Of a stretch of DNA of 64,000 nt, positions 18,271 through 53,964 are shown in pieces. The DNA comes from Chiloscyllium plagiosum. Its lineage: Eukaryota. The DNA lies in NCBI RefSeq assembly GCF_004010195.1, contig NC_057726.1, positions 69,947,468 to 70,011,467 of the forward strand. The letters run 5' to 3'. The notes beneath the pieces were generated by a model, which was not told where the DNA came from, searched no databases, and saw only the letters and a program-made list of their open reading frames with translations. Position 1 is the stretch's first letter. Every line of letters begins with the position of its first letter. The translations under genes and the position numbers were made by a program.

Positions 18271-18459
18271 ATGGAACAATCGGACACTGACGATGAATTA
18301 ACGTCCGCCAGTCTCGATTTGAACGGCACCAGCAAAGTAAGAAACCCGAACATAAACGCCAAGGATCCAGAGTGTGCCGAGCTAAAAGTAGCAGCACCAA
18401 CCGGAGCAACTGAGGCCGTCTGCGGAGAAACCAGCATCTCAGAATGTTGCTCATCTTAG
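18271..18459 (+). pseudogene. Gene A: terminal cytoplasmic exon with signalling tyrosines replaced
   Basis: Aligns without gaps to gene B's last exon: LTSASLDL vs MTYAALDF and KDPECAEL vs KDTEYAQV, 11/40 identities by hand. The upstream intron shares aatgaac...tattctcaa with 38786-38806. The acceptor reads catac instead of catag. Confidence 0.7.
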
Positions 18460-21400: not shown

Positions 21401-22378
21401 TAAGGAAAGATGTAAAGGCTTTGAGACCAGGCCAGAGATGTTTACCTGAATAATATTTCGAAGAAAACCATTGATTTATAAGGATTGGTTGGAGAGAATA
21501 AGTTTAAGCTTCGGAAGAATAAGTCAAATTGACTGAAACATGCAGAATCCAAAGTGGGTCTTGGCAAGGTGCATGTTACCAGAATATTTGCAATCGAGGG
21601 AGATTGCAGAATTAATGGCAGTTGTATAAATGCCATAGTCCTCAGTGTAACACATCGTTGAGGAAAACATCTTATTCTCACACCAAAAAATCAATATCTT
21701 TGCATCGCATCACACTTCCTCGAAGGGCGGGGTAGCAGAATATTTGTTCTTTTTAAAAATGCAACCTAGATAGATGTTTGTCAATCGTGGGGTGGGTGTG
21801 TGGGGTGTGGGGTTTCGCGGTTGGAAATTCACTTACGGTCTTAAAATGCATCGTAGCTTGGCTCAGTTAGGAATATTAAATGCGATTATTTGAAAGAACA
21901 CACTGATGTTTGTGCTGCTCATACAGTCCACACATCCCCAACAGAGGGAAAGACTGGCTTGAATGATCAGCTCGAGCCGTACACAGCAAATGGCTAACTG
22001 TTGCACTGAACTTTAGCAAAATGAACAAGAAAGAGTCATGTTCCTGATCAATGAACCGGATGTTACACTGCACTCTGACACTGTCTATCCAATGTCACTT
22101 TCAAGTTCTTGCAAACTATCAGCCAGTTCACGCTCTGTCTCTCCGGCAAATAGATCAACATGTTCCTGAGTATTGCACTTTTCTGTCTCTTTATTCAGAC
22201 AACAATTTTCCCAGGTATTCTCTCTCTTTCTACAGTACATTGCCTTTCCATAAAGTCGACCTGTTATTTAATCTTATTTAATATATTGTGTACAATTCAC
22301 TTTTGGACAGGTTAAGTCAATTAATGAACTCCACTCATTTAATCTTGCTAGTCTGTTTGTAAATGTCTTTTTCTGTAG

Positions 22379-22699
22379 GTTCTGGGGAAACCTTGGATAA
22401 AGTGACCCAGATACCAGGGAACATGACTAAAACAGTGGGTGAAAATGTGTCCTTCCATTGCTCAATTCCTTTATTTCAAGTCGGCCCAGCTGTCAACGTA
22501 ACCTGGTGGAAGCAAGGTGATCCTCATTCTCTCAATGCAGAACAAGATGACCGAAAAGTAATTGGCCTCCAGACTAAATTCAGTGGATTCCTTCAGATAA
22601 TCAATGTCAGTGTACAGGACAGAGGAATGTACTATTGCACAATCGTCCAACAAGGCAAATTATTTGGAAACGGAAAAGGGTCCAATTTAACAGTGTTGG
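22379..22699 (+). CDS. Gene B exon: Ig V-set domain with germline-joined J-like G strand
   Basis: ttctgtag| and |gtatgt splice sites, phase 1-1, 321 nt open. VTQ, FHC (B-strand Cys), VTWW, LQI, DRGMYYC, then FGNGKGSNLTVL. Five N-X-S/T sequons. Confidence 0.93.
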
Positions 22700-23514
22700 G
22701 TATGTATGAAAGCAAAATTTAAGCAATAGAGACAAGTAATATTTCACATTTGAAATAATTCTCGGGTGTGCTTGGGAAAGTTCACATTACAGGATTTATT
22801 AAAATGTATTTGATGTTATATGTCTTCAATGGCAAGTTAACATTTTTGTCCAACCCTAATTATCCTTGAACGGAGTCAATTCTTGATCAATTGGGAGAAT
22901 TGTTGAGAGTCAGCAACGTTGCTGTATGTTTTGAGTGATATAGTGTCCAAGCAGGTCCGAATGGCAGGTGGTGTGCGTGTGCTCCTTGGAGACATCTCCA
23001 TAGTTCCTGATACATGCCCACATTTAAGTTGCATCGCTGACTGCTGTACTTCATGTTCAGTATTTCAATAGTTTAGAATGATGTATCAGCAGTTGTACCT
23101 GAATTATACAGCCGTGGGACATAAACAGGAATCTCATGTACTATTGCAATATGATGAAAAGATACATGCTCTGATCAAGGGTCATCCCAAACGTTAACTT
23201 GCTTTCTCTCCATGGATGCTGCCTGACTGGCTGTGATCGCCAGCATTTGTTGCTTTCAGTACAGATTCCAGTATCTGAAGTAATTTGCTCCGACATTTCA
23301 ATGATATTGGTTAAGAGCAATAGCCCATTGCAAGCGACACAGATTTAATTATTTATTTTTAACATCTTCTTCACTCAAAGTTGACAGTTGAGAAAAAGGT
23401 TCCCTGGTGCATAAGATTTAACCCTGGTTTTTCACTGCCAGACCTGTTGAGTTTCTCCAGCAATTTCTGTTTATTTTTGTTGATGACGTTTCTTGACTGG
23501 CTTATTTTTAAGTG

Positions 23515-23812
23515 AAAGTGAGGATTGGATATGCTGGAGGCTAGAATCCAGAGTGTGGATTCTGGAAAAGCACAGCAGGTCAGGCAGCATCCGAGGAGCA
23601 GGAGAGTGGAAAAGCACAGCAGGCCAGGCAGTATCCGAGGAGCAGGAGACTGGAAAACCACAGCAGGACCGACAGTATCCGAGGGGCAGGAGACTGGAAA
23701 ATCACAGCAGGTCAGGCAACATTCTTGATGAAGGGCTTTTGCCTGAAACGTCGATTTTCGTGCTCCTCGGATGCTGCCTGACCTGCTCTGCTTTTCCATC
23801 ACCACACTCCGG
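23515..23812. repeat. Penelope pLTR-derived insert with about 4 x 44-bp tandem units and an inverted arm
   Basis: Units tggaaaagcacagcaggtcaggcagcatccgagg.gcaggagac followed by a degenerate hammerhead core and a reverse-complement arm. Confidence 0.8.
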
Positions 23813-24356
23813 GCTCATTTTATGCCGGTGTGATTTTAACAGGTAAATATTAAAATGTTGAAAGCTGATATTGCTAAAACCTAAGAACTGCTGGAGCAAC
23901 CGCCCAGGACACTCCATATGTTTTTGCTTTGCAATAAGTAAGTCACTACGTTGACTTGCGTGTCTGTTATGAATCAGTTATTTTTCCCCTCTGTCCCCTC
24001 TACATAACTGTCGTTTTCACCGTTGCTTTGTTGAACCACCGGCGATAGCAAATCATGAATCCAATTCCAGAGCCTATCGATAGTTATTTCCAGCTGAAAA
24101 ACTGAGATCTGTAACAACAGAAGTTCACGTTTTCTTGCCCACGCTTTGTCCGGGGATGAGTTAATATTCCCGCTGATACTGCACTATGTTCGCATCTCGG
24201 CACCAACAGCGCACATTGTCCAACCCTCACCACAGTGAGCACCTCCCCCACAACTGGACAGTAACTGTCCAGCAATGGGCCGAAACAAAAGATTGGGCTG
24301 TAATCCTCGTTTGACGTGAAGGTAACTTTATTTTTTCTTCCTGTTCACTTCCCTAG

Positions 24357-24668
24357 TTCCACCGACTCCACTGAATATTCTCTCTCAGCAGCCTGGAAAT
24401 GATCCATCCGTGACTCTTGCTGTTTTATGCTCCACATCTCCCTTTTACCCGAGGGATATCAGTTTTACTTGGTACAAAGATGGCAGTAAAACTACAACAG
24501 GAATCAGTACAGTCATTCGAGCAACAGACGACAGACTACACGAAGCATACAGCTGGTTGGAAGAAACACAGGCAATCCGAGCCGGAACTGTTTATACCTG
24601 CATGGTATCCCACAGCACCCTCCAAAGTTCAGCTGCGGTCAGTCACATCGTAACGAATGGCAGCCCGG
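24357..24668 (+). CDS. Gene B exon: Ig C1-set domain
   Basis: ttccctag| and |gtaaga, phase 1-1, 312 nt open. VLC.TSPFYPRDISFTWYKDG ... YTCMVSHSTL are C1-set signatures. Confidence 0.93.
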
Positions 24669-25344
24669 GTAAGAATTCTACTGGAACCATATCATTAATA
24701 ACGCACATCAAATCTGTGATACATGGAATTATACCGCACGGAAACAGACCCTTAGGTCCAACCAGTCCATGCCAAACCTCATCCCAAACTAAACTTGTTC
24801 CACCCGCCTGCTCCTGGTCCGTAATCCTGGCAAACCTTTCCCATATATGTACTTACCTAAATGTGTTTTAAACCATGTAATTGTCCCCATATCCATCACT
24901 TCCTCAGGAAGTTCATTCCACATGCAAACCGAACTCTGTGTAAAAACATTGGCCCTCATGCCTTTTTAGAAGGTCTCTCCTCTCACCTTAAACATGTGTC
25001 CCTAGTCTTGAAATTACCCATCCTAGGGAAAAGACAATGACCCTTCACCGTATCTGTACCCCTCATTATTTTATAAACTTGTATTGGGTCACCTCTCAAC
25101 CTCCTAATCTCCAGGGAAACAAGTCCCAACCTTGTATGTTTTACTTGCTAGAACCATGTAGTGTGCTCTTTATAATCATAAATGTGTTCTATTCAAGAAA
25201 ATATTCAATATTTTTGTTGACATTTTCCAGGCAAATTCTTTGAATTTGCACAGAAAATTAGAATTCACCTGGAGAAGATTACGTTTATTTTCTCTTTCTT
25301 GAAAATATCATAAATATATACTTTTTTGCAACAATAGCTAGGAC

Positions 25345-27705
25345 ACAGAACATAGAACAGTATAGGGCAGCATTCAGGCCCTTTGGCACACGATGTTGTA
25401 CTGAACATTTATCTTAATCTAAGATCAACCTAACCTACACACCCCTCAATTTACTGCCATCCATCTGCTTGTCCAGCAGTCGCTTAAATGTCCCTAATGT
25501 CTCTGACTCTACTAGCATCGCTGACAGTGCATTCCATCATCCACCACTCTCTGCAGAAAGAACCTACCTCTGATATCTCCCCTGTACATTCTTCCAATCA
25601 CCTTAAAATGAAGACCCTTCATGACAGCCATTTCTGCACTGGGGAAATGTCTCTGGCTATCTCCTCTGTCTATGCCTCTCAATGCCTTGTACATCTCAAT
25701 CAAGTCACTTTTCTTCCTTCTCTCCAGTGTGAAAAGCTCAAGCTCACTCAATCTCTCTTCATAAGTTATGCCCTCCAATCCAGGCAGCACCCTGGTAAAT
25801 CTCCTCTGCACCCTCTCTGAAGCATCTACATGCTTCCTTTAATGATGCGACCAGAACTGGACACAATATTCCAAGTGTGGTCTAAACATGGTTTTTTCGA
25901 GCTGCTGAAAAATCTCGAGGCTCTTAAACCCAATCCTTTGTGCCTTTCTAAAAAACCCTATCAACGTTGGTGGCAACTTTGAGGGATCTATGTACATGGA
26001 CACCAAAATCCTGCTGTTCCTCCACTCTGCCAACTATCCTGTCTTTAACCCTGTATTTAGCATTCAAATTCGACCTTCCAAAATGAATCACTTCACATTT
26101 ATCCAGGTTAAAATACATCTGCTACTTCTCAGCCCAGGTCTGCATCCTGTCAATGTTTTGTTGTCGCCTGCAAAAGCCCTCAACACTATCTACAACACCA
26201 CCGACCTTTGTGTCATTGGCAAACCTACTAGCCCACCCTTCCACTCCATCCAAGTCCGATATAAAAACTACAAAGAGCAGATGCCCAAGACCAGATCTCT
26301 GCAGGACACCACTGGTCACCAACCTCCAGGCAGAATGCTTTCCATCCACTACCATTTGCCTTTTCTTTCGGCCAGCCAATTCTGTATCCAGACAGCCACA
26401 TTTCCCTGTATCCCATACCTCTTAATATTCTGAATGAGCCTACAATGGTGAACCTTATCAAATGTCTTACTGAAATCCATATACACCACATCCACTGCTC
26501 GCTCTTCAGCAACCTGCATCGTCACATCCTCAAAGAACTCAATAAGGCTTGTGAGGCATGACCTGTCCCTACCCTCTCTCTGATCATTCTCTTATTCCTC
26601 ATGTTAAGTGAAGAATGCATTTGGATTTTCATTAATCATTCCTGCTAAGGCTTTTTCGTGCCCTCTCCTAGCTCTCCTCAGTCCATTTCTGTGATCCTCT
26701 AAAGCTGTGACAGAACCTTACTTCCTCAACCTTAAGTATGTTTCCTTCTTCCTCTTGGTAAGAAGCTCCTCTTCTCTTGTCATCCAATGCTCCTTCACTT
26801 TACCATTCGTTGCCTGTCTCAATAAGGCAAAGTTATCCAACACTCGCAACAAGTGGTCCTTAAACAGCCTCCATATTTCCGTTGTGCATTTCCTGTAGAA
26901 CAATTGTTCCCTATTTATCCTCCACAGCTCCTGTATAATAGTGCTATAATTTTCCTCTCCCCCAATTAAATACCTTTCCATACTGTCCGTTCATGTCCCG
27001 GTCATGACTGTGGTGAAGGTGAGGCAGTTGAGGTCACTGTCACCGAAACGCTCTCCCACCGAGAGATCGGACACCTGTCCTGGCTCGTTGCCTAGCACCA
27101 AATCCAATGTAGCTTCCCCCAGTCAGCCTGCCTACGAATCAAGTAGGCGAACGTGAGGGCTGCAGATGCTGGAGATCAGAGTCAAGATTAGAGTAGTGCT
27201 GGAAATGCACAGCAGGTCAGGCAGCATCCGAGGAGCAGGAAAATTGACGTTTCGGGCAGGAGCCCTTCATTAGGAATGGTGAAGGGATTCTGCCCGTAAC
27301 AACGATTTTCCTGCTTCTCGGACACTGCCTGACATGTTGTGCTTTTCCAGCACCAATCTAATCTTACCGAAGTATTGAGAAAGGAATCCTTTCTGGACAC
27401 ACCTGACAAAATCAGCTCCATCCAGACCATCTGCACTAAAGAGGTTTCAATCAATATTGGGAAGTTGAAGTCATGCATAACAACAATTCTGTCACACCTT
27501 CACCTTTCTGAGAGCTGCTTTCCAATCTGTTCTTCCATCTCTCTACTGCTATTGGGGAGTCAATAGAAAACACCGAATAAAGTGACTGTTCCTTCCCTGT
27601 TACTGACTCCCACCCATACTGACTCAGTAGACAACCCCTCCACAACAATCTCCTTTTCTGCAGCTGTGATGGACTCTCTAATTAGCAATGCCACTCTCCC
27701 TCCTC
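25345..27705 (-). mobile_element. CR1 LINE (3' end near 25345), interrupted by a Penelope pLTR fragment (about 27150-27360)
   Basis: RPHLEYCVQFWS, RRFTRVLPGL, RFANDTKVGG and DFNFP motifs on the minus strand. Confidence 0.9.
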
Positions 27706-27874
27706 TTGAATTGGATTGAATTTATTGTCACATCTACTGAGGCACAGTGAAAAGCTTTGTCTTGCGAGCAGTAAAGTCAGATCACATAGCTAAGTAGTAT
27801 AGATAGTAAATAATAGGTAAGCAGCAGCAAAAATAAAAACACAGGTACAGGCGAATGTTAAGAGTTTGTGGCAT

Positions 27875-27982
27875 GAGAGAATGTGCAAACTCCACACAGA
27901 CAGTCACTCGAGGCTGGAATCAAACCCGAACGCCTGGCGCTGTGAGGCCTTAATGCTAACCACTGAGAAACCATGCTGCCCT
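27875..27982 (-). mobile_element. HE1/V-SINE 5' fragment
   Basis: Matches the tRNA-derived head of the SINE at 59055-59360. Confidence 0.75.
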
Positions 27983-28634
27983 TAAACAGATGAGTAACTT
28001 AAACTATTTTCCAGTCCTCTGCAACCTGCCTTGAGTCCAATGATTCCTGAGAGATCACCACAAATGCCTTTACGATCTCCTTCGCTATCTCCCTCAGAGC
28101 TCAGAGGTGTACGTCTGGTATGGATGATTTATCTACCTTCATATCATTCAGCTTCCCCAGCACTTTTTGCTTGTAACAGCCACTGCACTCACCTTTGCCT
28201 CTTGAATCTCTTGAAATTCAGGTATGCTGCTGGTGTCTCCACTGTGATAACTGATGCAAGTACATGTCCATGGACTTGACATGATGCTAAACATTAATTT
28301 TTATAATGTTTGGGACTAATACTGCAACAAAGTTTGAATGAGAGACATGCAATGGTTTTCTTTAACTCTGGATTTAATAGAGTCAAAGAGGCACAGAGAT
28401 GTACAGCACGGAAACAGACACTTTGGTCCAACTTGTCCTTGTCTGGCTTTGTTTCTAATTTCCAGCATCCATAGTTCTCAGACATTTTTTTAAACTTATC
28501 GATCTGCATGATGTGACAACAATCATCAACTACTAAATGTATTGGAAAGTGTATTCTAAAAGGAAATGATAAAAAAGCAATTATGAGGCAGTTACTTTGG
28601 CATTACCTATAATGGCAAAACGTTCGTCCAAAAT

Positions 28635-29280
28635 AGAGTCATAGAGATGTACAGCATGGAAACTGACCCTTCGGTCCAATCCGTCCATGCCGACTAGATA
28701 TCCCAACCCATTCTAGTCCCATCTGCTAGCAACTGCCCCACATCTCTCCAAATCCTTTCTATTCATATACCCATCATGATGCCTTTTAAATGTTGCAAAT
28801 TTACTGCCCTCCACCACTTTCTCTGGCAGCTCATCCCATACGCGGACCACCACATTTGAAAAAGTTGCCCCTGCAGTCTCTTTTATATCTTTCCCCTCTC
28901 ACCTAAACCTATGCCCTCCAGTTCTGGACTCCACCACCTCCTCATGATTTTATGAACCTCCATTAGGTCACCCCTCAACCTCCGACGCTCCAGGGAAAAC
29001 AGCCCCAGCCTATTCAACCTCTCCCTATAGCTCAAATCCACCAACTTTGGCAACATCCTTGTAAATCTTTCCTGAACCCTTTCAAGTTTCACAACATCTT
29101 TCCGATAGGAAGGAGACCAGAATTGCACTCAATATTACAAAAGTGGCCGAACCCATGTCCAGCTGCAAAATGGTCTGTACTCAGTACTCTGATCAATAAA
29201 GGAAAGGATGTCAAACCCCTTTTTCACTATCCTATCTACCTGCGACTCTACTTTCAAGGAGCTATGCATCTGCACTCCAT
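28635..29280 (-). mobile_element. CR1 LINE 3' fragment
   Basis: VQFWSPSYRKDVVKLERVQERFTRMLP...LERRRLRGDL. Confidence 0.9.
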
Positions 29281-30249
29281 GTTCAGTGTAATTGTCTGCA
29301 GAGTGATACACTGTATCTTATCTGAAAAATATAACATCACTGGAACTGAACCATTGACTCTGCTTTTTCTCCACAGATGACGCCAGACCTTCTGAGTTTT
29401 TCTAACAATTTCTGTTATTGTTCCTGATTTCCAGCATCTAAAGTTCTTTGAGGATTTTGTTAAACCTTAGATTCTTACAATGGCGCCTTCAAAGATAGCT
29501 GAATATGCACCTTGACGTTCTACCATATCTGCCTCAGAATAAAACTATTTAGAATATCCTGCCTCTCCTAGCTGTTTTGACAAAATGTACAATCAATTTA
29601 TAATTACAAATATAAGTTTCTGCCAATTTGAAATGCTTACCTGTATGGTTTAACATCAGCTCCTGTGTTCAGCACTGCATACTAGCTGATCATCAGAAAA
29701 CATTCTGTCATCCATGAATCACACAATTTCACTCCAGCTATTCAAGACACAGTAATTTGCAAAGTCATTAAGTGAAGATTTGTCATCAATGTGATTCCAG
29801 GAGGACCTGATTTAAAGTTGACATTTATAAACACATTGCTAAATTAGGGTCAGTTAGAGCAGAGGTACTGGTTCCAGTTTTGGCCACAATGGATGCACTG
29901 AGATAGTAGGTTTTTCATAAAACATCTAAAAAGATTCTTGCATATTGTTTAGGGAACAGTCCACATTGGAAACATGGACATTGAGGTTATGATGAATCAT
30001 AAATTGCGGTGATTAAACTTATCTTCCATGCAGTCATTCTTAGTTCTACAAATGCAATTGAAGACAATTGCAGTTCTGATGGCACTCTTAAAATGAATGG
30101 AATTGGCATTCATCATTCAAACATTTGATCCCATGTAAGGGTCCCATACAGGGAGAGGCTAAATAGACTGGGCCTGTCGGTCCTAGAGCTTCAGAAGTTG
30201 AGGGGTGACGTAAAAGATGGTTATAAGAAAATGATCAACTAGCATTTTA

Positions 30250-30690
30250 GAGTCATAGATTCATAGAGATGTACAACACGGAAACTGACCATTTGGTCCA
30301 ACTCAGCCATGCTGAGCAGATATCCTCAATTAATCTAATCCCATTTGCCAGCATTTGTCCCATATCCCTCTCAACCATTTCTATTCATATGCCCATTTAA
30401 ATGTTGTAATTGTACCAACCTCAAACACTTCCTCTGGCAGTTCACTCCATGCAGGCACCACCCATTGCGAGAAAACGTTTCCCCTTAGGTCCCTTTTAAA
30501 GCTTTTCCCTCTCACATTAAACTCATGCCCTCTAGTTTTGGACTCTTCTATCACAGGAAAATGACCTTGTCTATTTACCTTATCCATGCCCCTCCTGATT
30601 TTATCACCCTCTTTAAGGTCACCCCTCAACCTATGATGCTCCAAGGAAGACAGCGCCAGCCTATTCAGCCTCTCCCTGTAGTGCAAACCC
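30250..30690 (-). mobile_element. CR1 LINE 3' end, enclosed in an inverted duplication (30065-30766)
   Basis: YRERLNRLAL..LRGDL...RGNVFSQWVV..W motif and 3' tail. Confidence 0.85.
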
Positions 30691-33314
30691 TTTCATGGGA
30701 GATGAAATTTTTGAATTATGAATGCCAATTGCATTCATTTTAAGAGTGCCATCAGAACTGCAATTGGGATAAACAACATTGCTCAGCTCATAAATTATAT
30801 AGAGATCAAACCTGTTTGGTTATATCCTGGTGTTGTGTCCTTTGGCTTTGCCCACTCCAGTCCAACACCAGCACCTCTACATTATAATGTAATTGTTTTA
30901 ATCAGCATCAGAACTCATAGCTCCCTCCAAACTGAATGAATGGATGTAGTTGCTGTGGGGATGTTCACCGGCCTGGGAAATTGGTTTGCTGCTTGGTGAA
31001 CATGTCCACAGCAACTGCAACCATCATCCAAGCTACAAACCTTTACATAAACCTCGAATGCATGGATGCTGACAAAAACAGCAAGTTCACCCATAGAATC
31101 CAAGAGTCCTGAAGCATATTTGGTCCATCACATCAGTATGGTAATTTGAGTGGGGTGCCAGATTTACTCCCATACCACTGTGTGCCATTTGCACCTCAAC
31201 AAATTAGTCCACCGAAAACACAGATTCCACTGCTCTGCTCCGTATTTCTGTGTAAATCACTCTCAAAAACTTTTATTGTGAGAGTTTTCTGAATCTTCCT
31301 GACCTCCTTCAGAAAATAGCTATCCTCACTTAATTTGTGCATCTTTGTGACTAGTTGAATGTTATAATTGCAGGTTGTTTATTCATTCCCTCATGAAAGT
31401 TATTCCACTTTACTCAGTCGATCAAACTTCATGATTCCATATCCTTTTGCCAATCTCAACAAACTTCTTTGGTCGCATGAGAAACTTTTCTGTTCTCAAA
31501 TTCCTTAAATGATCTCAAACCACTCATCATTTTGAACCATCCACTCTACACTACAAGTAGAACCTTGAGTCCTGAATTGTACATAATTTTGCATCAGAGA
31601 ACTAACCTGTAATTTGCAAATGTTTAGCATGACTTCCATAATTTTGTACTCAATGTTACTCTCACGCAAGTTAAAGAATTCCATGAGCATCTGACAGCAT
31701 CTTATTACACCAGATGCGCTGAATCTTATGAAACTGCATCCTCAGTTTCAATTGACACTGCATGCATCTCGAAATGATATGATTAAGATCACACTGTCTC
31801 TCTGATTTACTTAGTACAACTGCACATTACACAGCTATGTGCATTAAATTGCCCTGTCTGAAGATATCAGTCTTTATATGTCATTCTGTTGTTCTCTACT
31901 GTCTCCCGGTTTGTATACAATGTCACAATCACCAATGATCCTATCAATCATGACCTTCAAATGTTGTTCTGCTGCTACTCCTGCTCAGTCCTTTGACACA
32001 CTAATGCCGAGGGAATCCCACTGCATTCTAAAGCTGTGTTTGAAGTATGAACTTTTGTTCAGCTTCACTTTCTGTCAAAACATTTCTCCACTGGTTGCTT
32101 GCAGAAGCTACTTTCTCTGATAGAGGTCATCCCTGTGAAAAGATGACTTTTGCTTTGTTGCCCAAGCCTATGCTAAGCACCTTTTGCTGTGTCTCAGGAT
32201 GCTTTCTCTGGTGTGGAGGTCTCTGCTGTAAATGAATTCCATGGGCTAAAATAATGCAGGGTTCATTCAGCAAGTTTGATTGCTTTTTTTTCCTTTAATC
32301 TGCATTAGTTGTTTCATTTTCCTTTCTGTCAAACATAAGTTAAGTTGATCATCATTTTCTACTTCATGGTCTCATGACCACAACGCTAATAACCATTTCA
32401 TATGCTGCGGAGTCAAAAGATTTTATGAGAATTTTGAAAAATGTTGTATCATCATAAGGATCAAGTAGCTTGTTACTGTTGATGTTTATAATGAAGCCGG
32501 AGATGTGCCTCTCAGAGCTCGGTCCATTCTTCCTCAGTTAGCACCTTGTGGCTACTGTTAATACGGTAGGTTTACAGGATTTCAGAAATGTCCTTTTTTG
32601 AATGGTTGATATTTGCCTGAGTTAGCCATTGATTTTTGTTGAGGAGGAAGAAATTTTACCGACAGGATGTCCAATGCTTTTTCTCACATCAATACATTAT
32701 TGTTGTTCTGACCACGATGTACCACAAACAGTAGTCTTGACTTTTGAGAGTAATATATCCATCACATAAAGAGAAATTATGCACTATCTGGAGTGACAGT
32801 GCACCAATGTTTGGCAAGCGAGGGCCAGTGAATCATTGGAGGGGGTTTTGAATTAGTTTTCCAAGTGAACACCCATCAGGATCTGAATGAGATATGTTAG
32901 AGATTTGGTCTTAACTCTGGTGTTTGGCAGGGAATGTCTCACTAACAGATGGTTCTCACAGGCATTTGTCCTGGCATTGGGTTCCTCAACACAGTCCAGT
33001 AGCCTTTCCACAGTAAAACCATGTTCCACTCCACTCTAATGAGCTCCAGGAGACTGAGAAAACACTCACCATGATTTATATTATCTGCAAGTTCACTTCA
33101 GAAAATGGAGGTTTCAGACAAATAATGTAAAGATTGTTATCTCAGTCTGAAAATCCAAAGGGAAGTGGAAAACTTAAGTTCAGTTCTGTAGTTGAATATG
33201 CATTCCATTAAGACATGACTAAAATGATTTAATGTACCCTAACTTTCCACTCAAGTGTTAACTGATATGAACAGTAAGCAATGTTAATTGATGTTTGTGA
33301 TTTATTTGTTTTAG

Positions 33315-33425
33315 ACTGTGTGTCCACAAAGTATTTGATGATTTCTGCAACTGTATCAGCTGGATTGATATTATTGGTGCTCAGCCTCATCATGGTGAAG
33401 CGATACACAGCAAACAAAAATATGG
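33315..33425 (+). CDS. Gene B exon: connecting peptide + uncharged transmembrane helix
   Basis: ttgttttag| and |gtagga, phase 1-1, 111 nt: DCVSTKYLMISATVSAGLILLVLSLIMVKRYTANKNM. In frame with the C1 exon. Confidence 0.85.
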
Positions 33426-34704
33426 GTAGGAAGTTATTTAATCTTTTCAAATAAACAATGTCCAAATAGAATGTCAATTTTAACTTTGCACTATATCTTA
33501 AGATTTTCTCTGTGCAACTGAATAGGTTACACAATACTTAGCTTATCTGACATGGCCAGGGCAATGGGGTACAATATTCAAATTTTATCCAACCTCCCAG
33601 AGATATGAGCATGCCAAAGGTGCTTTATTGCAAAATGAAGATTATTTCATTGTCTGGGATTACTGCTTTTGGGGAATCAATCTTCAGGTTTCCCAGCATG
33701 CATTCATTGTTGAACTTTCCATTTCTGAATATCAAAATATGTATCGTAATCAAATATAGGGCCGCATTTTTCTGACGAATGGCAATCTTACACAGATTGG
33801 CATCCTGACCCTTCAATGACAGCGATAAAGAGCTCCATATTTCTGAAAGTAGCTTCTGATCAAGCATCCATCAGAAACACAGAGTTCTGCTTCCATTCTA
33901 ATAATTCTCTTGTAACACAGAGCAGTCAGGGAAAAGCAAACTAAGTCTCCTTTTCACAGCAGTCACTTGCCCCTAGCTGAAGTTTAGCTGTCCAGAACAG
34001 ACAGCCACTTTCACACCAGCTGTCAAGTGGTAGGTACCAAATGCAAGTATGAGGTTAGGGTGCTGCGGAGAGATGCTGCCATCTGGATGAGGGTCAGATA
34101 AATAGGATGCCAAGTGAGATGAAGTGGCAAGCTGATATGAATTAGGATGGCAGTTGGGAATTATGCCAAATGTTCAGGAGGCCAATTGGGTGGTGGGTAT
34201 CCTGCTATGGGTTAGCGTGCCAGGTGGGTAGAATGCCAAATGGGAAGGGAATACGTTGACAGGAAGTAGGGTTCTAGGTGAAAAGAACAGTGGGATGGCA
34301 CATGGATAACTATAATAAAAGAGTGCCAAGATAGCTCCTCAGCCAGTTAAGTGATACAGTGCATAAAGTGCATCAGAATAGTTGAAAACTTGTGTCTGGC
34401 AGACCGCAAGAGGGAGTGATTATCTTGTCCTAAGGGAGTCAGGTCTCCCGTGGGAAGGGCATGGATTGATTATAGGAGGGGCAGAGACAGACCATACTGG
34501 AAATTCGGCAAGAGGGATATCATGTCCCAGGAAAGGAAGGGCAACATGTCCCAGGAAGGAGGAGTCAGGCTGGGTTTGAAGTGAGGAAAGGAAAGAGCTT
34601 CTTCAGGGCAGGTAATGGTGTTGCCACCAAGACTTAGTGAGGAAAGTAGACTGCTGTTTCTTTTGCTGGGGAAGATGATCCTGAACCAAATGGGTCACAG
34701 GCAG

Positions 34705-35092
34705 ATTTTATTTCTGGAGCTTACGAGGTTGAGGAGTGACCTTATCAAGGTTTATAAAATCATGAGATGTGCAGCTGAGGTGAACAGAAAAAGTCCTTTC
34801 CCTGGGGTGGGGAAGCTCAAGCTGGGAGGAGAAAGATTTAACAGGGACCTGAGGGACATCTTTTTCACACAGAGGGTGGTTTGTGCGTGGAATGATCTGC
34901 TGGATGAAGTTATAGATGCAAGTACAGTTACATCATTTAAAAGATATTTGGATAGACAAATGGATAGGAAAGTTTCACAGGGATTTGGGCCAAATGCAGG
35001 CTGTGGGATTAGTTTAGTTTGGGAAACTTGTTTCACATGGACTGGTTGGGCTGAAGGGTCCGTTTCAATGCTGTGTGACTCAATGACTCTGT
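34705..35092 (+). mobile_element. CR1 LINE 3' end
   Basis: RLRSDLIKVYKIMR...FFTQRVVCAWNDL...FKRYLD plus 3' UTR tail. Confidence 0.85.
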
Positions 35093-35819
35093 CCAGAGAG
35101 GGAGAAGTGGAGCTGTGTCTGCAGTAGGGAAAAAATGGGTGATGAATCTAGCTTTGGGGGAGAGGAATGCATGAGATTTAAACTGGGGTAAAGGGGAAGC
35201 TCTGTTTTATGGCTGTGGGGGCAGATCAGCTTCAGAGATGGTAAGAACGGGCAACATCGTGCGGGAGAGTCCCATCAGGCCCATTGTGGGGAAAGGGCAT
35301 TTGCTGGAACCAAGAAATGCAAGGCAGTGAAGGACGAGCTGGTCCAGAAAACATCAGGGTTTTGTCATTTCCACAGGCCAGCATGGTGTAAGGTACCAGG
35401 CAGAGGAAGGTGATTTCTGGTCAGGATTTCTGAGCAAATGTTGCCTGTCAGACGTATTGTTATTCAGGAGTTGAACGACATCTTCAATAGTATAAGGTTT
35501 GATTTGAGTGTCTGCATTTAATTTAATCAGAGACCTCCAAATTCTATTTACGTGGATGCTTTCAGAGGGTTCTAAGTGTAGAGAAATTGCCCAATTTCTG
35601 GCAATTATTTTGGAGTCTACTATATTGAGCAGTCGACTATTGTCTTCCTGTTCAGCTCCCATCCATGATGAAATGTCAATTATCTGGCACTGGAAAATGT
35701 GGGCCAATACCTTTTTTAAAATTGTGGTATGGGGATTGTGTTATGATTTGCATTAAGCTTTGCAGAAACGCATTTCCCGGATTGTTATTCATTTTAAACT
35801 TTATTTCTTACCCGATTAG

Positions 35820-35860
35820 TGAAAACCAATGATGACAAATCGAGTAATGATGAACACAAG
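35820..35860 (+). CDS. Gene B exon: cytoplasmic micro-exon with GC donor
   Basis: Pyrimidine-rich acceptor ending gattag|. 41 nt, phase 1-0, VKTNDDKSSNDEHK. Donor AAG|gcaagt is the GC-AG consensus. Supplies exactly the phase change needed between the TM and ITIM exons. Confidence 0.7.
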
Positions 35861-36351
35861 GCAAGTTTTTTTTACACAAAATATAACTGTATATAACTAA
35901 TTCGCATTTAGTGCAATAGCTATGTTTTATTTTGCTGCTTTAATTATTTATGCAAAATAACACAGGTTGTACTCAGTGACATAGGATTAAAACAAAAACA
36001 TCAGTAGGTCAGATGGTGTCTACTGTAGCTGTAATATTGTGATTGTGAACATACTAATTAAGAGTTTGTATAGAACAGAATGTTTGCTTTGGCTCTTAGG
36101 AAAAGAAATCACTGTGATATGCTTAGTTTGTATGTAGCATTGTCCAAAACACAGACATTGACTTTTATCCTCCACCTGACACTTACTTACAAGCCCAACT
36201 TTACCAGTCAAGCAGGAATTGACAATGATAGTTACCATTATCAGTGATGTCTCCAGATGCAGAATTAATAGAACGTTTTTCTGAATGTTGCATTTTGACG
36301 ATGGCAGTTTTGTTATTTTTTGATGCACCCTTGTTTTAAAAAATTCTCAAG

Positions 36352-37217
36352 GTCAGGTTCGTAGGAGAGTAGTCTGACACAGAACAAACGACCAAGAGGC
36401 GAGTCTGCTAGAATATGAGCATTTTATTCCCCGCAGCGTCGCCACAACCAGGTCTCATCTCAAACGGGTCTGGCTTATACTCACTCTACATGTTACCGGA
36501 ACTGGGAGCCGTCAGTTCTCGTAGAGCGGTTGCCAACAACCCACGCTCGGCGGTTAACCGTAACCCCGGAGCAGACTCCCGGGTCTGGCTTATACTCACT
36601 CTACATGTTACCGGAACTGGGAGCCGTCAGTTCTCGTAGAGCGGTTGCCAACAACCCACGCTCGGCGGTTAACCGTAACCCCGGAGCAGACTCCCGGGTC
36701 TGGCTTATACTCACTCTACATGTTACCGGAACTGGGAGCCGTCAGTTCTCGTAGAGCGGTTGCCAACAACCCACGCTCGGCGGTTAACCGTAACCCCGGA
36801 GCAGACTCCCGGGTCTGGCTTATACTCACTCTACATGTTACCGGAACTGGGAGCCGTCAGTTCTCGTAGAGCGGTTGCCAACAACCCACGCTCGGCGGTT
36901 AAACGTAACCCCGGTGCAGACTCACCGAACTGGAGACTTTTCCAGGTGATATACTCTTTTCCAGATATAAACATTCATGTGAACAGCAGAGCAAGGCTAA
37001 AAAACACATTCCATTCTGGTTACATACAGATAAGAAGATTCACACGGGGAGGTGTGTAATAAGATTCACACGGGACTAAGCAACACCTCCATTCCGGTTA
37101 GATTCACACATGTATTGGGACATAATTTTTAACCGTTTCACCACATTCCACTGCTTGGCCCAATACATGTGTTACATTATGATTCACACATGTATTGGGA
37201 CATAATTTTACACCACA
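36352..37217 (-). mobile_element. Solo LTR-like element
   Basis: The minus strand begins TGTGGTG, has repeated gattcacac motifs in a U3-like part, a TATA-like sequence near 36950-36970 and AATAAA at 36423-36428. The left terminus and TSD are not clean. Confidence 0.5.
36466..36923. repeat. 4 x 115-bp near-identical tandem repeat
   Basis: Units start at 36466, 36581, 36696 and 36811. Confidence 0.97.
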
Positions 37218-38506
37218 ACCCTGTGCCAGACTAAAAAAAAAATGGTTCATGATGTCAAGAACAGCAGGAGACATCTGATAGAAGATTGTTCTTGCTTTCA
37301 TTTCTTTTCAGTTCAGATCATGTGAGACATTTCGGAATTTAGAAAAAATGGAAAATTTCAGCCTCCAACTCCTATGGATTGAATTCACTGATTCCTTCCT
37401 TTAACTACGATGTTAAGAAGGTATGAAGAAGCTTCCTCTAAAGTTGAGGCTTATTTTTCCATCATTTCCCATCTCATGAAATCAACTCATAGAAATTTGT
37501 TGGCATGAAGTCGCAGTTTTCCAATACATCAGTTTATGATTCCCACAGTGCCATAGACAGACTAAGCACATTACAGCAGTTTCCTTTCATAAACAGCAAT
37601 AGCAAACATCCTGTTCTGAACAAACTCTTTATTAGTATGTTCACGACCAAAAGGAGAACATTTCCAGCTCAAATAATGTTCTTGTCATCACAGCTCAGTT
37701 ACAGGAAGTTCTCATGTATTTTCAGCAATCAATCACAGGGGAGAATAGAATATTACCTTGCACATAACGGGTCTTGTAAAAAAATCATCAAAGACAGCTT
37801 CGCACAACTAACAATTCTGTATGGCATTGATAAGACCATGTTTTTGGTAAAATTGAGGTTTTACTGCCCTGCCTAACTGAGGACATGCTTAACACTGGTA
37901 GAATGCAACTCATGTAAACTAGTCTGGTTCCTGGAAGAAATGGATAGTTTTATAATGGAAGATTGCGCAGAGTGGGCCAACATTTCTTAGCGATTTGATG
38001 AATAAAACGTAATTGAGTTGAAAAGCATTTGGTTTGCAAGGAATTAGACAGACTTGATGAAAGGAGTTTTTTTTTCCCTTGGATGGGTTTGATTCATGGA
38101 TTTCTATTGAGAAGAAGAGACATTTCTTTGTTCAAAATTTAATAATGATACAGATTTTGTGCCACATAGAACTTTGAATGTTCACTCATTAACTTGACTC
38201 AAGAAATGTATCTAAGGTTTAGAGCATTTAAGTAAATAAACCTATCATTTGGAAAATCACTGAGGATTAATCAAGACCAGAACTGACTGCAAGGGCCAAA
38301 TAGCACACTACTGTTTTGTTTAATACTGACATTTAGTAAACATGCTTCCAGGCGATTTTGTAGATTTTGTATCTGTTTTATTGGTATCCATAATTAGAAT
38401 TCCTCGTCCTGGTTACCCAATCAATTTTAAACTTAAAGTGGTAGAAAGAGAGACAGACATGGATGTAGGTATAAACTTACATTGTTTTTTTTTTCAACTC
38501 ATACCG

Positions 38507-38605
38507 GGAACAACTGATGCGATGACACCTTATGATGCACTAAATCTGAACAATTTGCAGAAGGCACCAAGACCAAGGCATCAAGAAATGGTAGCATATG
38601 CCCAG
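38507..38605 (+). CDS. Gene B exon: first tyrosine-motif cytoplasmic exon (acceptor non-canonical)
   Basis: 99 nt, phase 0-0: GTTDAMTPYDALNLNNLQKAPRPRHQEMVAYAQ. Donor CAG|gtaggg. A strong T-tract lies upstream, but the acceptor reads ccg instead of cag. Confidence 0.65.
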
Positions 38606-38820
38606 GTAGGGGAAAGACTCAGAACACAATGACACCATATAGCAGTAATTAAGAATCTATTAGAGCTCAGTGTATGAAATGCCTACAATTCTACTTTTTA
38701 AAAATCTGTTGCACTTGCACTAATTCATTGCGACACTGTCTATTTTTATTGTTTAACCTAACACCTGAATCCAAGTGACTAAAAAATGAACCAATGATAT
38801 TCTCAAAATTGTTTTCACAG

Positions 38821-38964
38821 ACCAGGACAAGACCTCAGGATCATAAAATGACCTATGCTGCTTTAGACTTCTCAGCCCCCAGGAAAACAGAGAAAACAAA
38901 TTATAAGGAAAAGGATACAGAGTATGCTCAGGTTCACTTGGAAAAACAAAGACAAGCTTTGTGA
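38821..38964 (+). CDS. Gene B exon: terminal cytoplasmic exon with ITIM-like MTYAAL and ITSM TEYAQV
   Basis: gttttcacag|, phase 0: TRTRPQDHKMTYAALDFSAPRKTEKTNYKEKDTEYAQVHLEKQRQAL*. Confidence 0.85.
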   Translation, partial: TRTRPQDHKMTYAALDFSAPRKTEKTNYKEKDTEYAQVHLEKQRQAL

Positions 38965-39039
38965 TAAATGCAATGAAAAGTCTGTTAATGCCAAGGCATT
39001 TTTGATTGTTGTATGTCTTGAACAAAATGTCCATTAGAA

Positions 39040-40500
39040 AAAAGAACACAGAACATGGAATACAGAACACGGCTCACAGAACATGGAACATAGAACAGTA
39101 CAACACAGTACAAGTCCTTCAGCCCCCGATGATGTGCTGGCCTTTTATCCAACTCAAAGATCAGACGAAACTGAATGCTCTTCATTATATTACCTTCCAT
39201 GTGCCTTTCCAAGAGTCACTTAAATGTCCCTAATGTATCTGACTCTACTACCACTGCTGACAGTGCATTCCACGCACCCACCCATCTCTCTGTGTTAGAA
39301 CCTACCTCTGACATCTCCTCTAAACTTCCCTCCAATTACCTTAACATTATGCCTCATCATGATAGACACTTCTGCCATGGGAAGAGGTCTCTGACTATCC
39401 TTTCTACCTATGCCTGTCAACATCTTGAGCACCTCTATCCAGTCACATCTCTTCCTTCTTAACTTTTCCAGGTTGAACTCCATCTGCCATTTAGCAGCCG
39501 AGTTCTGCATCCTGTCAATGTCTTGTTGCAACCTACGACAGCCCTCCACACCATCCTCAACTCCACAAACCTTTGTGTCATCGACAAACTTACTAATCCA
39601 CCCTTTCACTTCCTCATCCAAGTAATTTATAAAAATCGCAAAGCACAGAGGTTCCACAGGTCCCTGTGGATCACCAGTGGTCACCAAGCTCCAGGCTGAA
39701 AAGTTTCCATCTCCCACCACTCTTCGTCTTCTATGGGCCAGCCAATTCTGTATCCAGGCAGCCAGATTTCCCTGTATCCCATGTCTCCTTATTGCTGAAT
39801 GAGCCTGCCATGGGGATCGTTATCAAATTCCTTGCTCAAGTCTATGTATACCACATCCACTACTCGATCTTCAACAATGTGTTTTGTCACATCTTCAAAG
39901 AATTCATTTATTTCGGAGGCATAACCTGCCCCTCACACAGCTATGCTGATTATTTCAAATCAAACTATGGTTTTCCAAGTAATCTTAAATCCTGTGTCAC
40001 GGAATCCTCTCCAATATTTTGCCCACCAAAGACATAAGACTGACTGGTCTGTAATTCATTGGATAATCCGTATTCCCTTTCTTCAACAAGGGAATAACAT
40101 TTGCCACCCTCAATCATATGGCACTACTTCAGTGGACAGTGAGGAAGCAAAGATCATCACGAAGTATGCAGCAATCTCTTCCCTCACCTCCTGTAGTAAC
40201 CAAGGTTATATCCAGTAAGGCCAAGGGGCTTTATCTATCATTATGTTTTTTCAAAATTTACAGCACATTCTCCTTCCTAATATCAACCTGTTCTCGCGTA
40301 TCAGTCCGTTTCACGCTGTCCTCAGAAATATCAAGATCCCTCTCAGAAGTGAATACTGATGCAAAGTATTAATCAAGGACCTCCCCTACCTCCTCTGATG
40401 CCTATGCAAGCTTCCTCTACTATCCATGATTGGCTCTACCCTCTGGTCAACCTCTTGTTCCTCACACAAGCATACATTGCCTTATGGTTTTCCTTAGTCC
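39040..40500 (-). mobile_element. CR1 LINE 3' portion inserted about 75 nt after the gene B stop codon
   Basis: KFVDDTKV and KWQMEFN motifs, with a gaacatag-type repeat tail at about 39040-39100. Confidence 0.9.
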
Positions 40501-53651: not shown

Positions 53652-53964
53652 GTTCTGGGGTAATCTTGGTCAACGTGACCCAATTTCCCGGGAGCGTGAC
53701 TGAAACTGTGGATGCAAATGTGTCCTTCCATTGCTTGATTCCTTTATTTCTAGTCGGCCACGCTGTTAAGGTGGAAGCAAGGTGATCCTCATTATCTACA
53801 CGCGGAACAAGATGACCAAAAAGTAACTGGCCACAAAAATAAATACAGTGGCTTCCTTCAGATAATCAATGTCAGTGTACAGGACAGAGGAATGCACTAT
53901 TGTACAATCGTCCAACAAGGCAAATTGATTGGAAACAGAGCAGGATCCAATTTAACAGTGTGGG
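53652..53964 (+). pseudogene. Gene C: VJ exon with 8-nt deletion (frameshift)
   Basis: Paralogue of 22379-22699, 313 vs 321 nt. Loss of cgtaacct just before the C-strand Trp gives an early TGA. YYC changed to HYC. Splice sites retained. Confidence 0.9.

What the first reader, a model, noticed from the sequence alone, without database searches (positions are those of the whole stretch)
22379..38964. Gene B: single-VJ/single-C1 receptor resembling a pre-rearranged antigen-receptor chain with an inhibitory tail
Seen: the V exon includes the J-like strand (YYC-9 aa-GNGKGSNLTVL) with no RSS or separate J segment. It is followed by a C1-set exon, and all six exons splice in frame (phases 1-1, 1-1, 1-1, 1-0, 0-0, 0-stop). 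Established: C1-set domains are largely restricted to Ig/TCR/MHC/tapasin/SIRP-type molecules; mammalian SIRPs are V-C1-C1 and NKp30 is a lone VJ. Inference: V-C1-TM with a SIRP-like tail is the architecture proposed for the pre-RAG ancestor of antigen receptors.
Basis: partly seen in the sequence, partly recalled or inferred. Interest (0 to 1): 0.85.

Follow-up and report, generated by a model that had tools for sequence, protein, structure and literature searches.

The report
Shark VJ-C1 receptor, already auto-annotated
This is a real shark gene for a cell-surface receptor built like one non-rearranging antigen-receptor chain, but it is one ordinary member of a large cartilaginous-fish family that genome pipelines already label "SIRP-alpha-like", and whether its inhibitory tail is used is unproven.

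Summary
Pfam and fold searches agree on the domain types. A family-HMM scan finds no second Ig exon in the 8.6-kb intron.

Each of these exons is an exact substring of an NCBI RefSeq model from Chiloscyllium plagiosum. That model is automatically named [quoted passage not shown] (SIRP-alpha-like).

Gene B belongs to a family found in sharks, rays and chimaera. Of 81 fetched relatives, 77 have exactly one V and one C1.

The family scores about equally against Ig lambda, SIRP-alpha and UrIg2. One member scores about equally against B7-H6. So SIRP membership is not shown.

The inhibitory tail is uncertain. The exon-4 donor is GC. Exon 5 has CG where an AG acceptor is needed. The RefSeq model reads through exon 4 and carries no ITIM. 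Only the last exon (ITIM-like plus ITSM) remains usable.

No RNA reads lay on the tail. The runs were shallow and their tissue is unknown, so expression is unproven.

Other first-stage notes report many such genes on other DNA of this genome.

Verdict: a new member of a known kind, of moderate interest. The "pre-RAG ancestor" reading is unsupported.

The parts
22160..22214 (+). Leader exon. It starts at ATG and encodes 18 hydrophobic residues plus one base, with donor gt at 22215.
   Evidence: Its translation is the first 18 residues of RefSeq model P0168. The junction codon reads Gly.
22379..22699 (+). V exon with a fused J-like G strand (YYC, 9 aa, GNGKGSNLTVL). Phase 1-1.
   Evidence: Pfam V-set 40.1 bits, full profile length. 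Exact substring of P0168. AF2 pLDDT 90.8, with the G strand broken at G-K-G. G98, G100 and V105 are at least 90% conserved in 63 sequences.
24357..24668 (+). Single C1-set exon. Phase 1-1.
   Evidence: Pfam C1-set 46.5 bits. Exact substring of P0168. AF2 pLDDT 89.5. All listed Foldseek matches (ranks to 50) are MHC class II entries.
24669..33314 (+). Intron of 8.6 kb with no further Ig exon. It holds repeat copies and ORFs that I read as retroelement remnants.
   Evidence: Family C1 and V HMMs against six-frame ORFs found nothing here on the + strand above noise. tblastn found nothing.
33315..33425 (+). Stalk plus transmembrane exon. It has a stalk Cys and an uncharged TM, followed by KRYTANKNM. 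Phase 1-1.
   Evidence: Exact substring of P0168. The junction codon reads Asp.
35820..35860 (+). Cytoplasmic exon 4 (KTNDDKSSNDEHK). Its acceptor is AG and its donor reads GC (aag|gcaagt).
   Evidence: It is present in P0168.
35861..35896 (+). Read-through of the exon-4 donor, as used by the RefSeq model. It adds 11 residues and then a stop, with no tyrosine motif of ITIM type.
38507..38605 (+). Exon 5 with two tyrosine motifs (TPYDAL, VAYAQV). Its frame is open, but the acceptor position 38505-06 reads CG. It is probably not spliced in.
   Evidence: Its counterpart is used in Hemiscyllium protein P0166.
38821..38964 (+). Last coding exon, with an AG acceptor. It carries an ITIM-like MTYAAL, an ITSM-type TEYAQV, and then a stop.
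   Evidence: It matches the family tail consensus KLTYAAL...TEYA. It is not part of RefSeq model P0168.

Best explanation
Gene B is a protein-coding gene of the whitespotted bamboo shark, going by the source name of the matching RefSeq model. It encodes a type I membrane receptor made of a split leader, one germline-joined V(J) domain, one C1-set domain, a stalk with one Cys, an uncharged transmembrane helix and a cytoplasmic tail.

It is one member of a large, tandemly duplicating family present in sharks, rays and chimaera. The standard architecture of that family is V-C1-TM. Its tails are either ITIM/ITSM-bearing or short.

Shown here: the domain types, the exon structure up to exon 4, the absence of a second Ig exon, and family membership.

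Inferred:
- The V domain binds an unknown ligand.
- If the GC donor of exon 4 is spliced to the last exon, skipping exon 5 whose acceptor is lost, the tail carries an ITIM-like and an ITSM motif about 25 residues apart. Once tyrosine-phosphorylated, this pair would recruit SHP-1/SHP-2-type phosphatases and dampen the cell, as in SIRP-alpha, PD-1 or Siglecs (recalled knowledge).
- Eight of the 24 relatives aligned have exactly such a two-tyrosine tail with no exon-5 equivalent.
For: - Leader, V, C1, TM and exon 4 are each exact substrings of P0168. NCBI names it 'tyrosine-protein phosphatase non-receptor type substrate 1-like [Chiloscyllium plagiosum]'. The junction codons fit.
- Pfam V-set and C1-set matches.
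- AF2 models with pLDDT 90.8 and 89.5.
- The C1 model matches MHC class II chains in every listed Foldseek row.
- The V model matches IgNAR V at Z 14.4, tied within 1 Z with NCAM Ig1, basigin, TCR V and Ig light-chain V. SIRP-alpha d1 appears in the Foldseek list.
- No Ig-like ORF lies in the long intron.
- Family breadth: all 51 hits and all 70 hits carry names of cartilaginous-fish species.
- 77 of 81 relatives have one V and one C1.
- The last exon fits the family tail consensus. P0162, P0081, P0139, P0173, P0174, P0178, P0179 and P0060 lack the exon-5 segment.
Against: - No RNA read lay on exons 4, 5, 6 or downstream. X6 had about 2% of the run read, X7 laid nothing, and X1 laid only on repeats.
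- The only public model of the gene reads through exon 4 and has no ITIM.
- The exon-4 donor is non-canonical (GC) and the exon-5 acceptor is lost.
- The first tail motif has Met at the -2 position, where the family consensus has Leu.
- The neighbouring copy, gene C, is broken, so decay is under way in this cluster.
- Ligand, cell type and phosphatase binding are all untested.
Confidence: 0.7

Rival explanations
1. Tail-less receptor. The RefSeq model is right, and transcripts run through the exon-4 donor and stop 11 codons later. The product is then a V-C1-TM protein with a short tail. It has no ITIM and no charged TM residue, so it would act as a non-signalling adhesion or decoy partner. It would work like SIRP-gamma (recalled).
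For: - P0168 ends with the exon-4 read-through.
- The donor is GC, not GT.
- An ATTAAA lies about 125 bases downstream, by my reading.
- The TM has no charged residue.
Against: - The donor context aag|gcaagt is otherwise consensus. GC-AG introns are a known minor class (recalled).
- The last exon keeps an open frame, an AG acceptor and both tyrosines.
- No RNA reads support the short form either: depth is 0 over 35700-36299 in X6.
- Pipeline models often extend to the next stop when evidence is lacking (my inference).
Confidence: 0.3
2. Decaying gene. Gene B is on its way to becoming a pseudogene. It is silent or nearly so, like its neighbours.
For: - Two splice-site changes in the tail.
- No RNA seen.
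- Gene C has an 8-base deletion in its V exon, a relic second C1, and a stop inside its TM-like exon.
- Gene A's tail has lost its tyrosines.
- Against gene C, pN/pS is 0.52 for V and 0.65 for C1.
Against: - All seven candidate exons have open frames.
- Every invariant family residue is kept: C27, W42, Y84, C86 in V, and P2, C24, W38, C81, H85 in C1.
- The C1 exon is more conserved between B and C (92.9%) than the flanking DNA (85-89.5%).
- The RNA sampling was too thin to count as evidence of silence.
Confidence: 0.15
3. True SIRP orthologue. The cartilaginous-fish family is the direct counterpart of tetrapod SIRPs. It either lost one C1 domain or predates the duplication of that domain.
For: - 27 of 70 family proteins get SIRP-type names from NCBI or UniRef.
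- SIRP-alpha d1-d2 scores 60.8 bits and d3 44.7 bits against the family profile.
- The four-tyrosine tails of full-length members (alignment) recall the SIRP-alpha tail. That tail is recalled, not tested.
- Paired inhibitory and short-tailed forms occur in the family.
Against: - Ig lambda (68.1 bits) and UrIg2 (58.0 bits) score about the same as SIRP-alpha.
- For member P0198, B7-H6 (41.8) and lambda chains (43.6) score above SIRP-alpha (37.9).
- 43 of the 70 names point elsewhere or nowhere.
- A search with the tail alone reached only 4 Callorhinchus proteins.
- The defining V-C1-C1 layout is absent.
- Synteny could not be tested.
Confidence: 0.3
4. Gene B preserves the architecture of the pre-RAG ancestor of Ig and TCR chains, and is specifically close to it.
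For: - It has VJ in one exon, one C1, a split leader and a short leader intron.
- The literature proposes a VJ-C1 precursor (PMC10751288 passages; PMC2785349 passages).
- Full-length V-exon matches in the PDB include lambda light chains with the J strand.
Against: - It is equidistant from several V-C1 families.
- UrIg and UrIg2 have the linkage evidence that this family lacks (PMC12227049).
- First-stage notes place MHC-type genes on other pieces of the assembly. This is a lead only.
- An ITIM tail is no part of the published precursor proposals that I read.
Confidence: 0.1

Closest known systems
Mammalian SIRP family (SIRP-alpha, beta, gamma; structure 2wng)
   Same: - An N-terminal V domain with a J-like strand, followed by a C1-set domain, a TM, and inhibitory tyrosine tails or short tails.
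- Automatic names point here for 27 of 70 relatives.
- 60.8 bits for d1-d2 against the family profile.
   Different: - One C1 instead of two.
- Sequence no closer to SIRP than to Ig lambda or UrIg2.
- CD47 binding is unknown.
- This gene's four-tyrosine tail cannot be assembled, because exon 5 lacks an acceptor.
UrIg and UrIg2 of elasmobranchs (PMC12227049; structure 9dmx)
   Same: - Non-rearranging, with VJ in a single exon and a split leader, followed by C1 domains.
- UrIg2 is the best whole-chain PDB hit of the C1 exon, at 63.2 bits summed over three domains.
   Different: - The nurse-shark UrIg2 transcript has nine C domains and the epaulette-shark model has 11 (section 7 of PMC12227049). 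Gene B has one.
- No ITIM is mentioned for them: a term search found 0 occurrences.
- Per single domain, UrIg2 scores 23-25 bits, below SIRP-alpha d3 at 26.9.
Ig lambda light chains and TCR chains
   Same: - A V-J-C1 order of domains, a GxG bulge in the G strand, and a C1 constant domain.
- Highest score for a V-C unit against the family profile, at 68.1 bits.
   Different: - No RSS and no separate J segment.
- A TM and a cytoplasmic tail with tyrosine motifs.
- A short V domain. I read it as lacking C'' from the strand list. Its best structural matches are IgNAR V domains.
B7-H6 (NCR3LG1) and B7 relatives
   Same: - V plus C1-type domain plus TM.
- 14 of 70 relatives are automatically named NCR3LG1-like.
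- B7-H6 scores 40.5-41.8 bits against member P0198.
   Different: - The family keeps a J-like GxG strand.
- PMC11599192 does not list B7s among joined-VJ genes (passage).
- Scores are no better than for lambda chains.
PRARP genes (Fu et al. 2019, J Immunol; named in PMC10751288 and PMC11599192)
   Same: [quoted passage not shown] Anything about their domain layout is recalled only.
   Different: Not testable here. The paper is not held and no PRARP sequence was available.

Membership tests
Cartilaginous-fish V(J)-C1-TM family (unnamed; automatic names 'PTPNS1-like', 'Ig lambda-1-like', 'NCR3LG1-like' and others) | Strong full-length similarity to family members | tested here: met
   - The exons are exact substrings of P0168.
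- P0168 scores 354 bits against the family profile.
- The V exon is 71% and the C1 exon 91% identical to Hemiscyllium P0166.
Cartilaginous-fish V(J)-C1-TM family (unnamed; automatic names 'PTPNS1-like', 'Ig lambda-1-like', 'NCR3LG1-like' and others) | One V with GNGxGS..L.V, followed by VPPTPL and one C1 with the YxCxVxH motif | tested here: met
   Consensus of 24 members. Invariant residues are kept. 77 of 81 relatives have one V and one C1.
Cartilaginous-fish V(J)-C1-TM family (unnamed; automatic names 'PTPNS1-like', 'Ig lambda-1-like', 'NCR3LG1-like' and others) | Tail with LTYAAL...TEYAx motifs | tested here: inconclusive
   The motifs are encoded in exon 6. Splicing to it is unproven, and the RefSeq model lacks them.
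SIRP family | V domain followed by two C1-set domains | tested here: not met
   There is one C1 exon and no Ig-like ORF in 24669-33314. The RefSeq model has one C1.
SIRP family | Sequence closer to SIRPs than to other V-C1 proteins | tested here: not met
   - Family profile against PDB: Ig lambda 68.1, SIRP-alpha 60.8, UrIg2 58.0 bits.
- No SIRP chain is among the best 60 of 385 PDB hits of the V exon.
- For the C1 exon, the best single-domain score is SIRP-alpha d3 at 26.9 bits. This is within 4 bits of the UrIg2 domains.
SIRP family | Cytoplasmic tail with four tyrosines in ITIM pairs (alpha type), or a basic TM residue (beta type) | tested here: inconclusive
   Four YxxL/V motifs are encoded in exons 5 and 6. 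Exon 5 lacks an AG acceptor, and the TM is uncharged.
SIRP family | CD47 binding | not testable with these tools
   This needs a binding assay.
SIRP family | Conserved synteny with the SIRP locus | not tested
Rearranging antigen receptors (IgL, TCR) | V and J segments separated by recombination signal sequences | tested here: not met
   V and J-like strand lie in one exon. No heptamer lies in the exon. The one intronic heptamer has no nonamer.
UrIg / UrIg2 | VJ exon followed by several C1 exons (nine or 11 in the two shark UrIg2 genes described) | tested here: not met
   Gene B has a single C1. The UrIg2 layout is from section 7 of PMC12227049.
C1-set Ig domain (Pfam PF07654) | Score above the curated cut-off, and a C1-type fold | tested here: met
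   46.5 bits against a cut-off of 21. All listed Foldseek matches are MHC class II entries, TM 0.69-0.81.
PRARP | Similarity to published PRARP sequences | not testable with these tools
   The paper is not held, and no sequence was on hand.

The most novel reading that the evidence does not exclude
The family to which gene B belongs is neither a SIRP nor a B7 offshoot. It would be an independent surviving lineage of the germline VJ-C1 receptor from which both rearranging antigen receptors and SIRPs descend. It would be kept as a large paired (inhibitory, short-tailed, activating) multigene family only in cartilaginous fish. It would then show what the precursor did before RAG: tyrosine-phosphatase-coupled self or pathogen sensing.
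Probability: 0.1. Interest if true: 0.85.

Novelty: new member of a known kind. Interest (0 to 1): 0.4.

Why it matters
Comparative immunologists look for non-rearranging VJ-C1 genes as witnesses of how Ig and TCR arose (PMC12227049, PMC10751288, PMC2785349). This work shows three things:

- Cartilaginous fish carry a whole family of V(J)-single C1-TM receptors with ITIM/ITSM or short tails.
- Pipelines label this family under at least eight unrelated kinds of name.
- None of my eight full-text searches found a paper describing it.

A proper description of the family could be useful. It would need phylogeny, map position, expression and ligand.

Gene B itself adds little beyond that. It is already a RefSeq model, its tail may be decaying, and its expression is unshown.

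Tried and rejected
- **RNA evidence.** One read-laying run on 35700-41699 with X1, X6, X7 and X2 gave no read on any tail exon. Coverage fell only on a high-copy repeat (36300-37300) and on 39100-40300. I had considered laying 22101-28100 instead. I chose the tail once the RefSeq model covered the 5' exons. As a result the V-C1 and C1-TM joints were never tested with reads.
- **Run X1.** It held 0.11 of the words of 22150-24700. In the tail stretch it lay on repeats only, so it does not count as expression evidence.
- **Tail homology to SIRP-alpha.** A tail-only search with P0041 residues 259-368 reached 4 proteins among 26 candidates, all from Callorhinchus. No tetrapod SIRP-alpha tail sequence could be obtained from a tool, so the resemblance stays recalled.
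- **Profile search of the big collection.** It found only cartilaginous-fish proteins. That search depends on shared 5-residue words, so it does not show absence elsewhere.
- **Domain phylogeny with outgroups.** Abandoned. The bony-vertebrate hits I named and read were C1-repeat proteins or tandem light-chain constant regions, not usable SIRP references.
- **Positive selection on V.** Not seen. pN/pS is 0.52 against gene C, and gene C is itself broken.
- **Pfam on intron ORFs.** Only one sub-threshold RVT_1 match, 21.4 bits against a cut-off of 29.6.
- **Papers not held.** Fu 2019 and Ohta 2019.
- **Supplements.** Not opened, as they are closed. Table S1 and the supplementary figures of PMC12227049 may list VJ genes that bear on novelty.
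- **Literature searches that found no description of this family.**

Full report
**What is there**

On the + strand I read seven candidate exons.
- A leader exon at 22160-22214. It starts at ATG and encodes 18 hydrophobic residues plus one base, with donor gt.
- A V exon at 22379-22699.
- A C1 exon at 24357-24668.
- A stalk/TM exon at 33315-33425.
- A 41-base exon at 35820-35860.
- Two tyrosine-motif exons at 38507-38605 and 38821-38964.

Two of its boundaries are off by one base, and it did not list the leader.

**Domain types, tested exon by exon**

Every search, fold and alignment used single exons or natural database proteins.

- *V exon, sequence.* It scores 40.1 bits on Pfam V-set (cut-off 26) over profile positions 3-109 of 109.
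- *C1 exon, sequence.* It scores 46.5 bits on C1-set (cut-off 21, E 4.6e-12). It has no C2-set or I-set match at E up to 1.
- *AlphaFold2 models.* With 63-row alignments, the models reach pLDDT 90.8 for V and 89.5 for C1.
- *C1 model, fold.* Every listed Foldseek match (ranks to 50) is an MHC class II entry, with TM 0.69-0.81.
- *V model, fold.* It is a short V domain. I read it as lacking a C'' strand from the strand list. Its best VIA-align matches are shark IgNAR V domains (Z 14.4, rmsd 2.0-2.1 over 98 residues). NCAM Ig1, basigin, TCR V and Ig light-chain V are tied within 1 Z. SIRP-alpha d1 is in the Foldseek list at TM 0.65-0.70.
- *J-like strand.* The model breaks the G strand exactly at G98-K99-G100. 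G98, G100 and V105 are at least 90% conserved in the family. So the J-like GxG bulge is a real family feature.
- *No RSS.* No RSS heptamer lies in the V exon. One CACAGTG sits in the V-C1 intron at 24231, where I estimate about 0.3 by chance. It has no nonamer at either spacing.

**No hidden second C1**

I built HMMs from 104 family C1 domains and 69 family V domains. I ran them without filters against all six-frame ORFs of the window. Only these matches appeared:
- gene B's V, at 137.7 bits;
- gene B's C1, at 126.5 bits;
- gene C's V, split over two frames;
- gene C's C1, at 122.1 bits;
- a relic C1 at 57250-57333, at 23.6 bits.

Nothing in 24669-33314 on the + strand rose above noise. tblastn agreed. 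The intron holds repeat copies and ORFs that look like retroelement remnants. Pfam gave only a sub-threshold RVT_1 match, and that was on an ORF beyond the gene.

**The gene is already modelled**

A HMMER search with the C1 exon against 1.84 billion representatives gave 507 hits at E up to 0.001. Many are proteins of 230-380 residues with one C1 stretch at about 122-220.

One related protein is P0168, which NCBI calls [quoted passage not shown] (291 aa). It contains the leader, V, C1, TM and exon-4 translations as exact substrings. The junction residues are G, V, D and V, as the split codons predict. So the window is bamboo-shark DNA or something identical to it, and gene B is a RefSeq model. 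That model supports V-C1-TM with nothing in between. I cannot tell what evidence NCBI had for it.

**The family**

- All 51 hits of a full-length search carry names of sharks, rays or the chimaera Callorhinchus. So do all 70 hits of a profile search.
- Of the 190 proteins fetched by then, 81 have a V like gene B's at more than 40 bits. Of those, 77 have exactly one V and one C1. The four exceptions are P0002, P0170, P0172 and the chimeric P0003. The 81 include isoforms, near-duplicates and P0168 itself.
- The automatic names of the 70 are inconsistent (my count):

| Name type | Count |
|---|---|
| SIRP-type | 27 |
| NCR3LG1-like | 14 |
| Ig lambda-like | 8 |
| MHC class II-like | 6 |
| tapasin-related | 4 |
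| PD-L1-like | 2 |
| CD276 | 1 |
| TCR beta-like | 1 |
| uncharacterised | 7 |

- First-stage notes of this scan report many more such genes over about 9 Mb of the same piece and on another piece. These are leads only.

**Which known family?**

- The family profile against PDB sequences gives, per V-C unit, Ig lambda 68.1 bits, SIRP-alpha d1-d2 60.8 bits (plus d3 at 44.7) and UrIg2 58.0 bits.
- For a member named NCR3LG1-like (P0198), the scores are B7-H6 40.5-41.8, lambda chains up to 43.6, CD276 40.9 and SIRP-alpha 37.9.
- The C1 exon alone ranks UrIg2 first only because three domains are summed. Its best single domain is SIRP-alpha d3 at 26.9 bits.
- The family is therefore about equidistant from several V-C1 families. 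The defining V-C1-C1 layout of SIRPs is not met. I do not file it as a SIRP, though it probably works like one.

**The tail**

Full-length relatives carry up to four tyrosine motifs, in the pattern YxxL ... TVYAQ ... LTYAAL ... TEYAx. Eight of the 24 aligned lack the first pair.

In gene B:
- Exon 4 ends aag|gcaagt, a GC donor.
- The position where exon 5 needs AG reads CG.
- The only upstream AG I found, at 38467-68 (my reading), is out of frame and runs into a stop.
- The last exon has a good AG acceptor. It encodes MTYAAL and TEYAQV about 25 residues apart.
- The RefSeq model ignores all this. It reads through exon 4 to a stop at 35894-96 and has no ITIM.
- The Hemiscyllium counterpart P0166 does splice exon 4 to exon 5.

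So three products are possible.
- A two-tyrosine inhibitory tail from exon 4 spliced to exon 6. I favour this, at about 0.5.
- A tail-less receptor.
- No product.

**Expression**

No RNA holder of 22150-24700 is on record. I laid four runs on 35700-41699.
- X6, single-cell polyA RNA with about 2% of the run read, covered only a high-copy repeat at 36300-37300.
- X7 laid nothing.
- X1 covered only repeats.
- X2, probably DNA, matched 38612-38848 without differences. It did not cover the exon-4 donor and gave no row at 38505.

This is no test of silence, but transcription remains unshown.

**Context**

Gene B 21053-25159 is colinear with gene C 52324-56714 at about 84% identity.

Gene C is broken.
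- It has an 8-base deletion in its V exon.
- It has a relic second C1.
- In the only frame that reads as a TM, a stop sits inside its last exon.

Between B and C, the C1 exon is 92.9% identical and the V exon 86.1%. The flanks are 85-89.5% identical. pN/pS is 0.65 for C1 and 0.52 for V. This shows mild constraint and no sign of positive selection.

**Literature**

| Paper | What I read |
|---|---|
| PMC12227049 | abstract, section 7, passages |
| PMC10751288 | passages |
| PMC2785349 | passages |
| PMC11599192 | passages |

They support the general idea that a VJ-C1 gene preceded Ig and TCR. They name UrIg, UrIg2, NKp30, PRARP and SIRP as joined-VJ genes. None of the parts I read describes this family. 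Eight full-text searches found no paper on it. Fu 2019 and Ohta 2019 are not held, and supplements were closed, so prior description cannot be excluded.

**Verdict**

- Gene B is a new, auto-annotated member of a known kind of receptor.
- The interesting object is the family, not this gene.

Noticed in passing
window 53654-53963: Gene C's V exon lacks 8 bases relative to gene B, at the NVTWW stretch. The exon therefore reads in two frames and is likely a pseudogene.
   Followed up: partly
window 57250-57333: There is a relic second C1 exon about 1 kb downstream of gene C's C1. It is 78% identical in DNA to gene B's C1, and tblastn shows a stop and a frame change. Gene B has no counterpart.
   Followed up: partly
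window 60383-60483: This is the exon noted by the first stage as gene C's activating TM. In the only frame that reads as a hydrophobic stretch with Arg, an in-frame stop sits in the middle.
   Followed up: partly
window 18289-18390: This stretch is a weak match to gene B's last exon (E 0.028). Both tyrosine positions are replaced, by Ser and by Cys. It agrees with the first-stage note on a relic tail of gene A.
   Followed up: partly
window 36300-37300: A high-copy repeat holds a 115-base unit repeated 4.0 times at 36465-36923 (99% matches). It has very deep coverage in both the DNA and RNA runs. Loose ends at 36406-36411 are poly-T, so it looks like a SINE-type element in antisense orientation inside the gene's intron.
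   Followed up: partly
window 23562-23722: A 44-base tandem repeat (3.7 copies) lies in the V-C1 intron. Related copies occur at several other places in the window.
   Followed up: no
window 33317-33319: A Cys codon sits in the stalk just before the TM. It is not present in the Hemiscyllium or Heterodontus relatives. It could allow a disulfide-linked dimer.
   Followed up: no
window 38535 and 38555: DNA run X2 shows other letters at about half depth inside exon 5: A>C at 14.2 of 24.9, and T>A at 10.7 of 24.9. This points to a second allele or a paralogue.
   Followed up: no
P0191 (Callorhinchus milii, 266 aa): This protein, automatically named NCR3-like, has V-type Pfam domains and no C1-set. 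It shares the family's tyrosine tail, at 73 bits on the tail alone.
   Followed up: no
window 24231-24237: A lone CACAGTG heptamer lies in the V-C1 intron, 120 bases before the C1 exon. It has no nonamer at 12 or 23 bases, so I take it as chance.
   Followed up: yes
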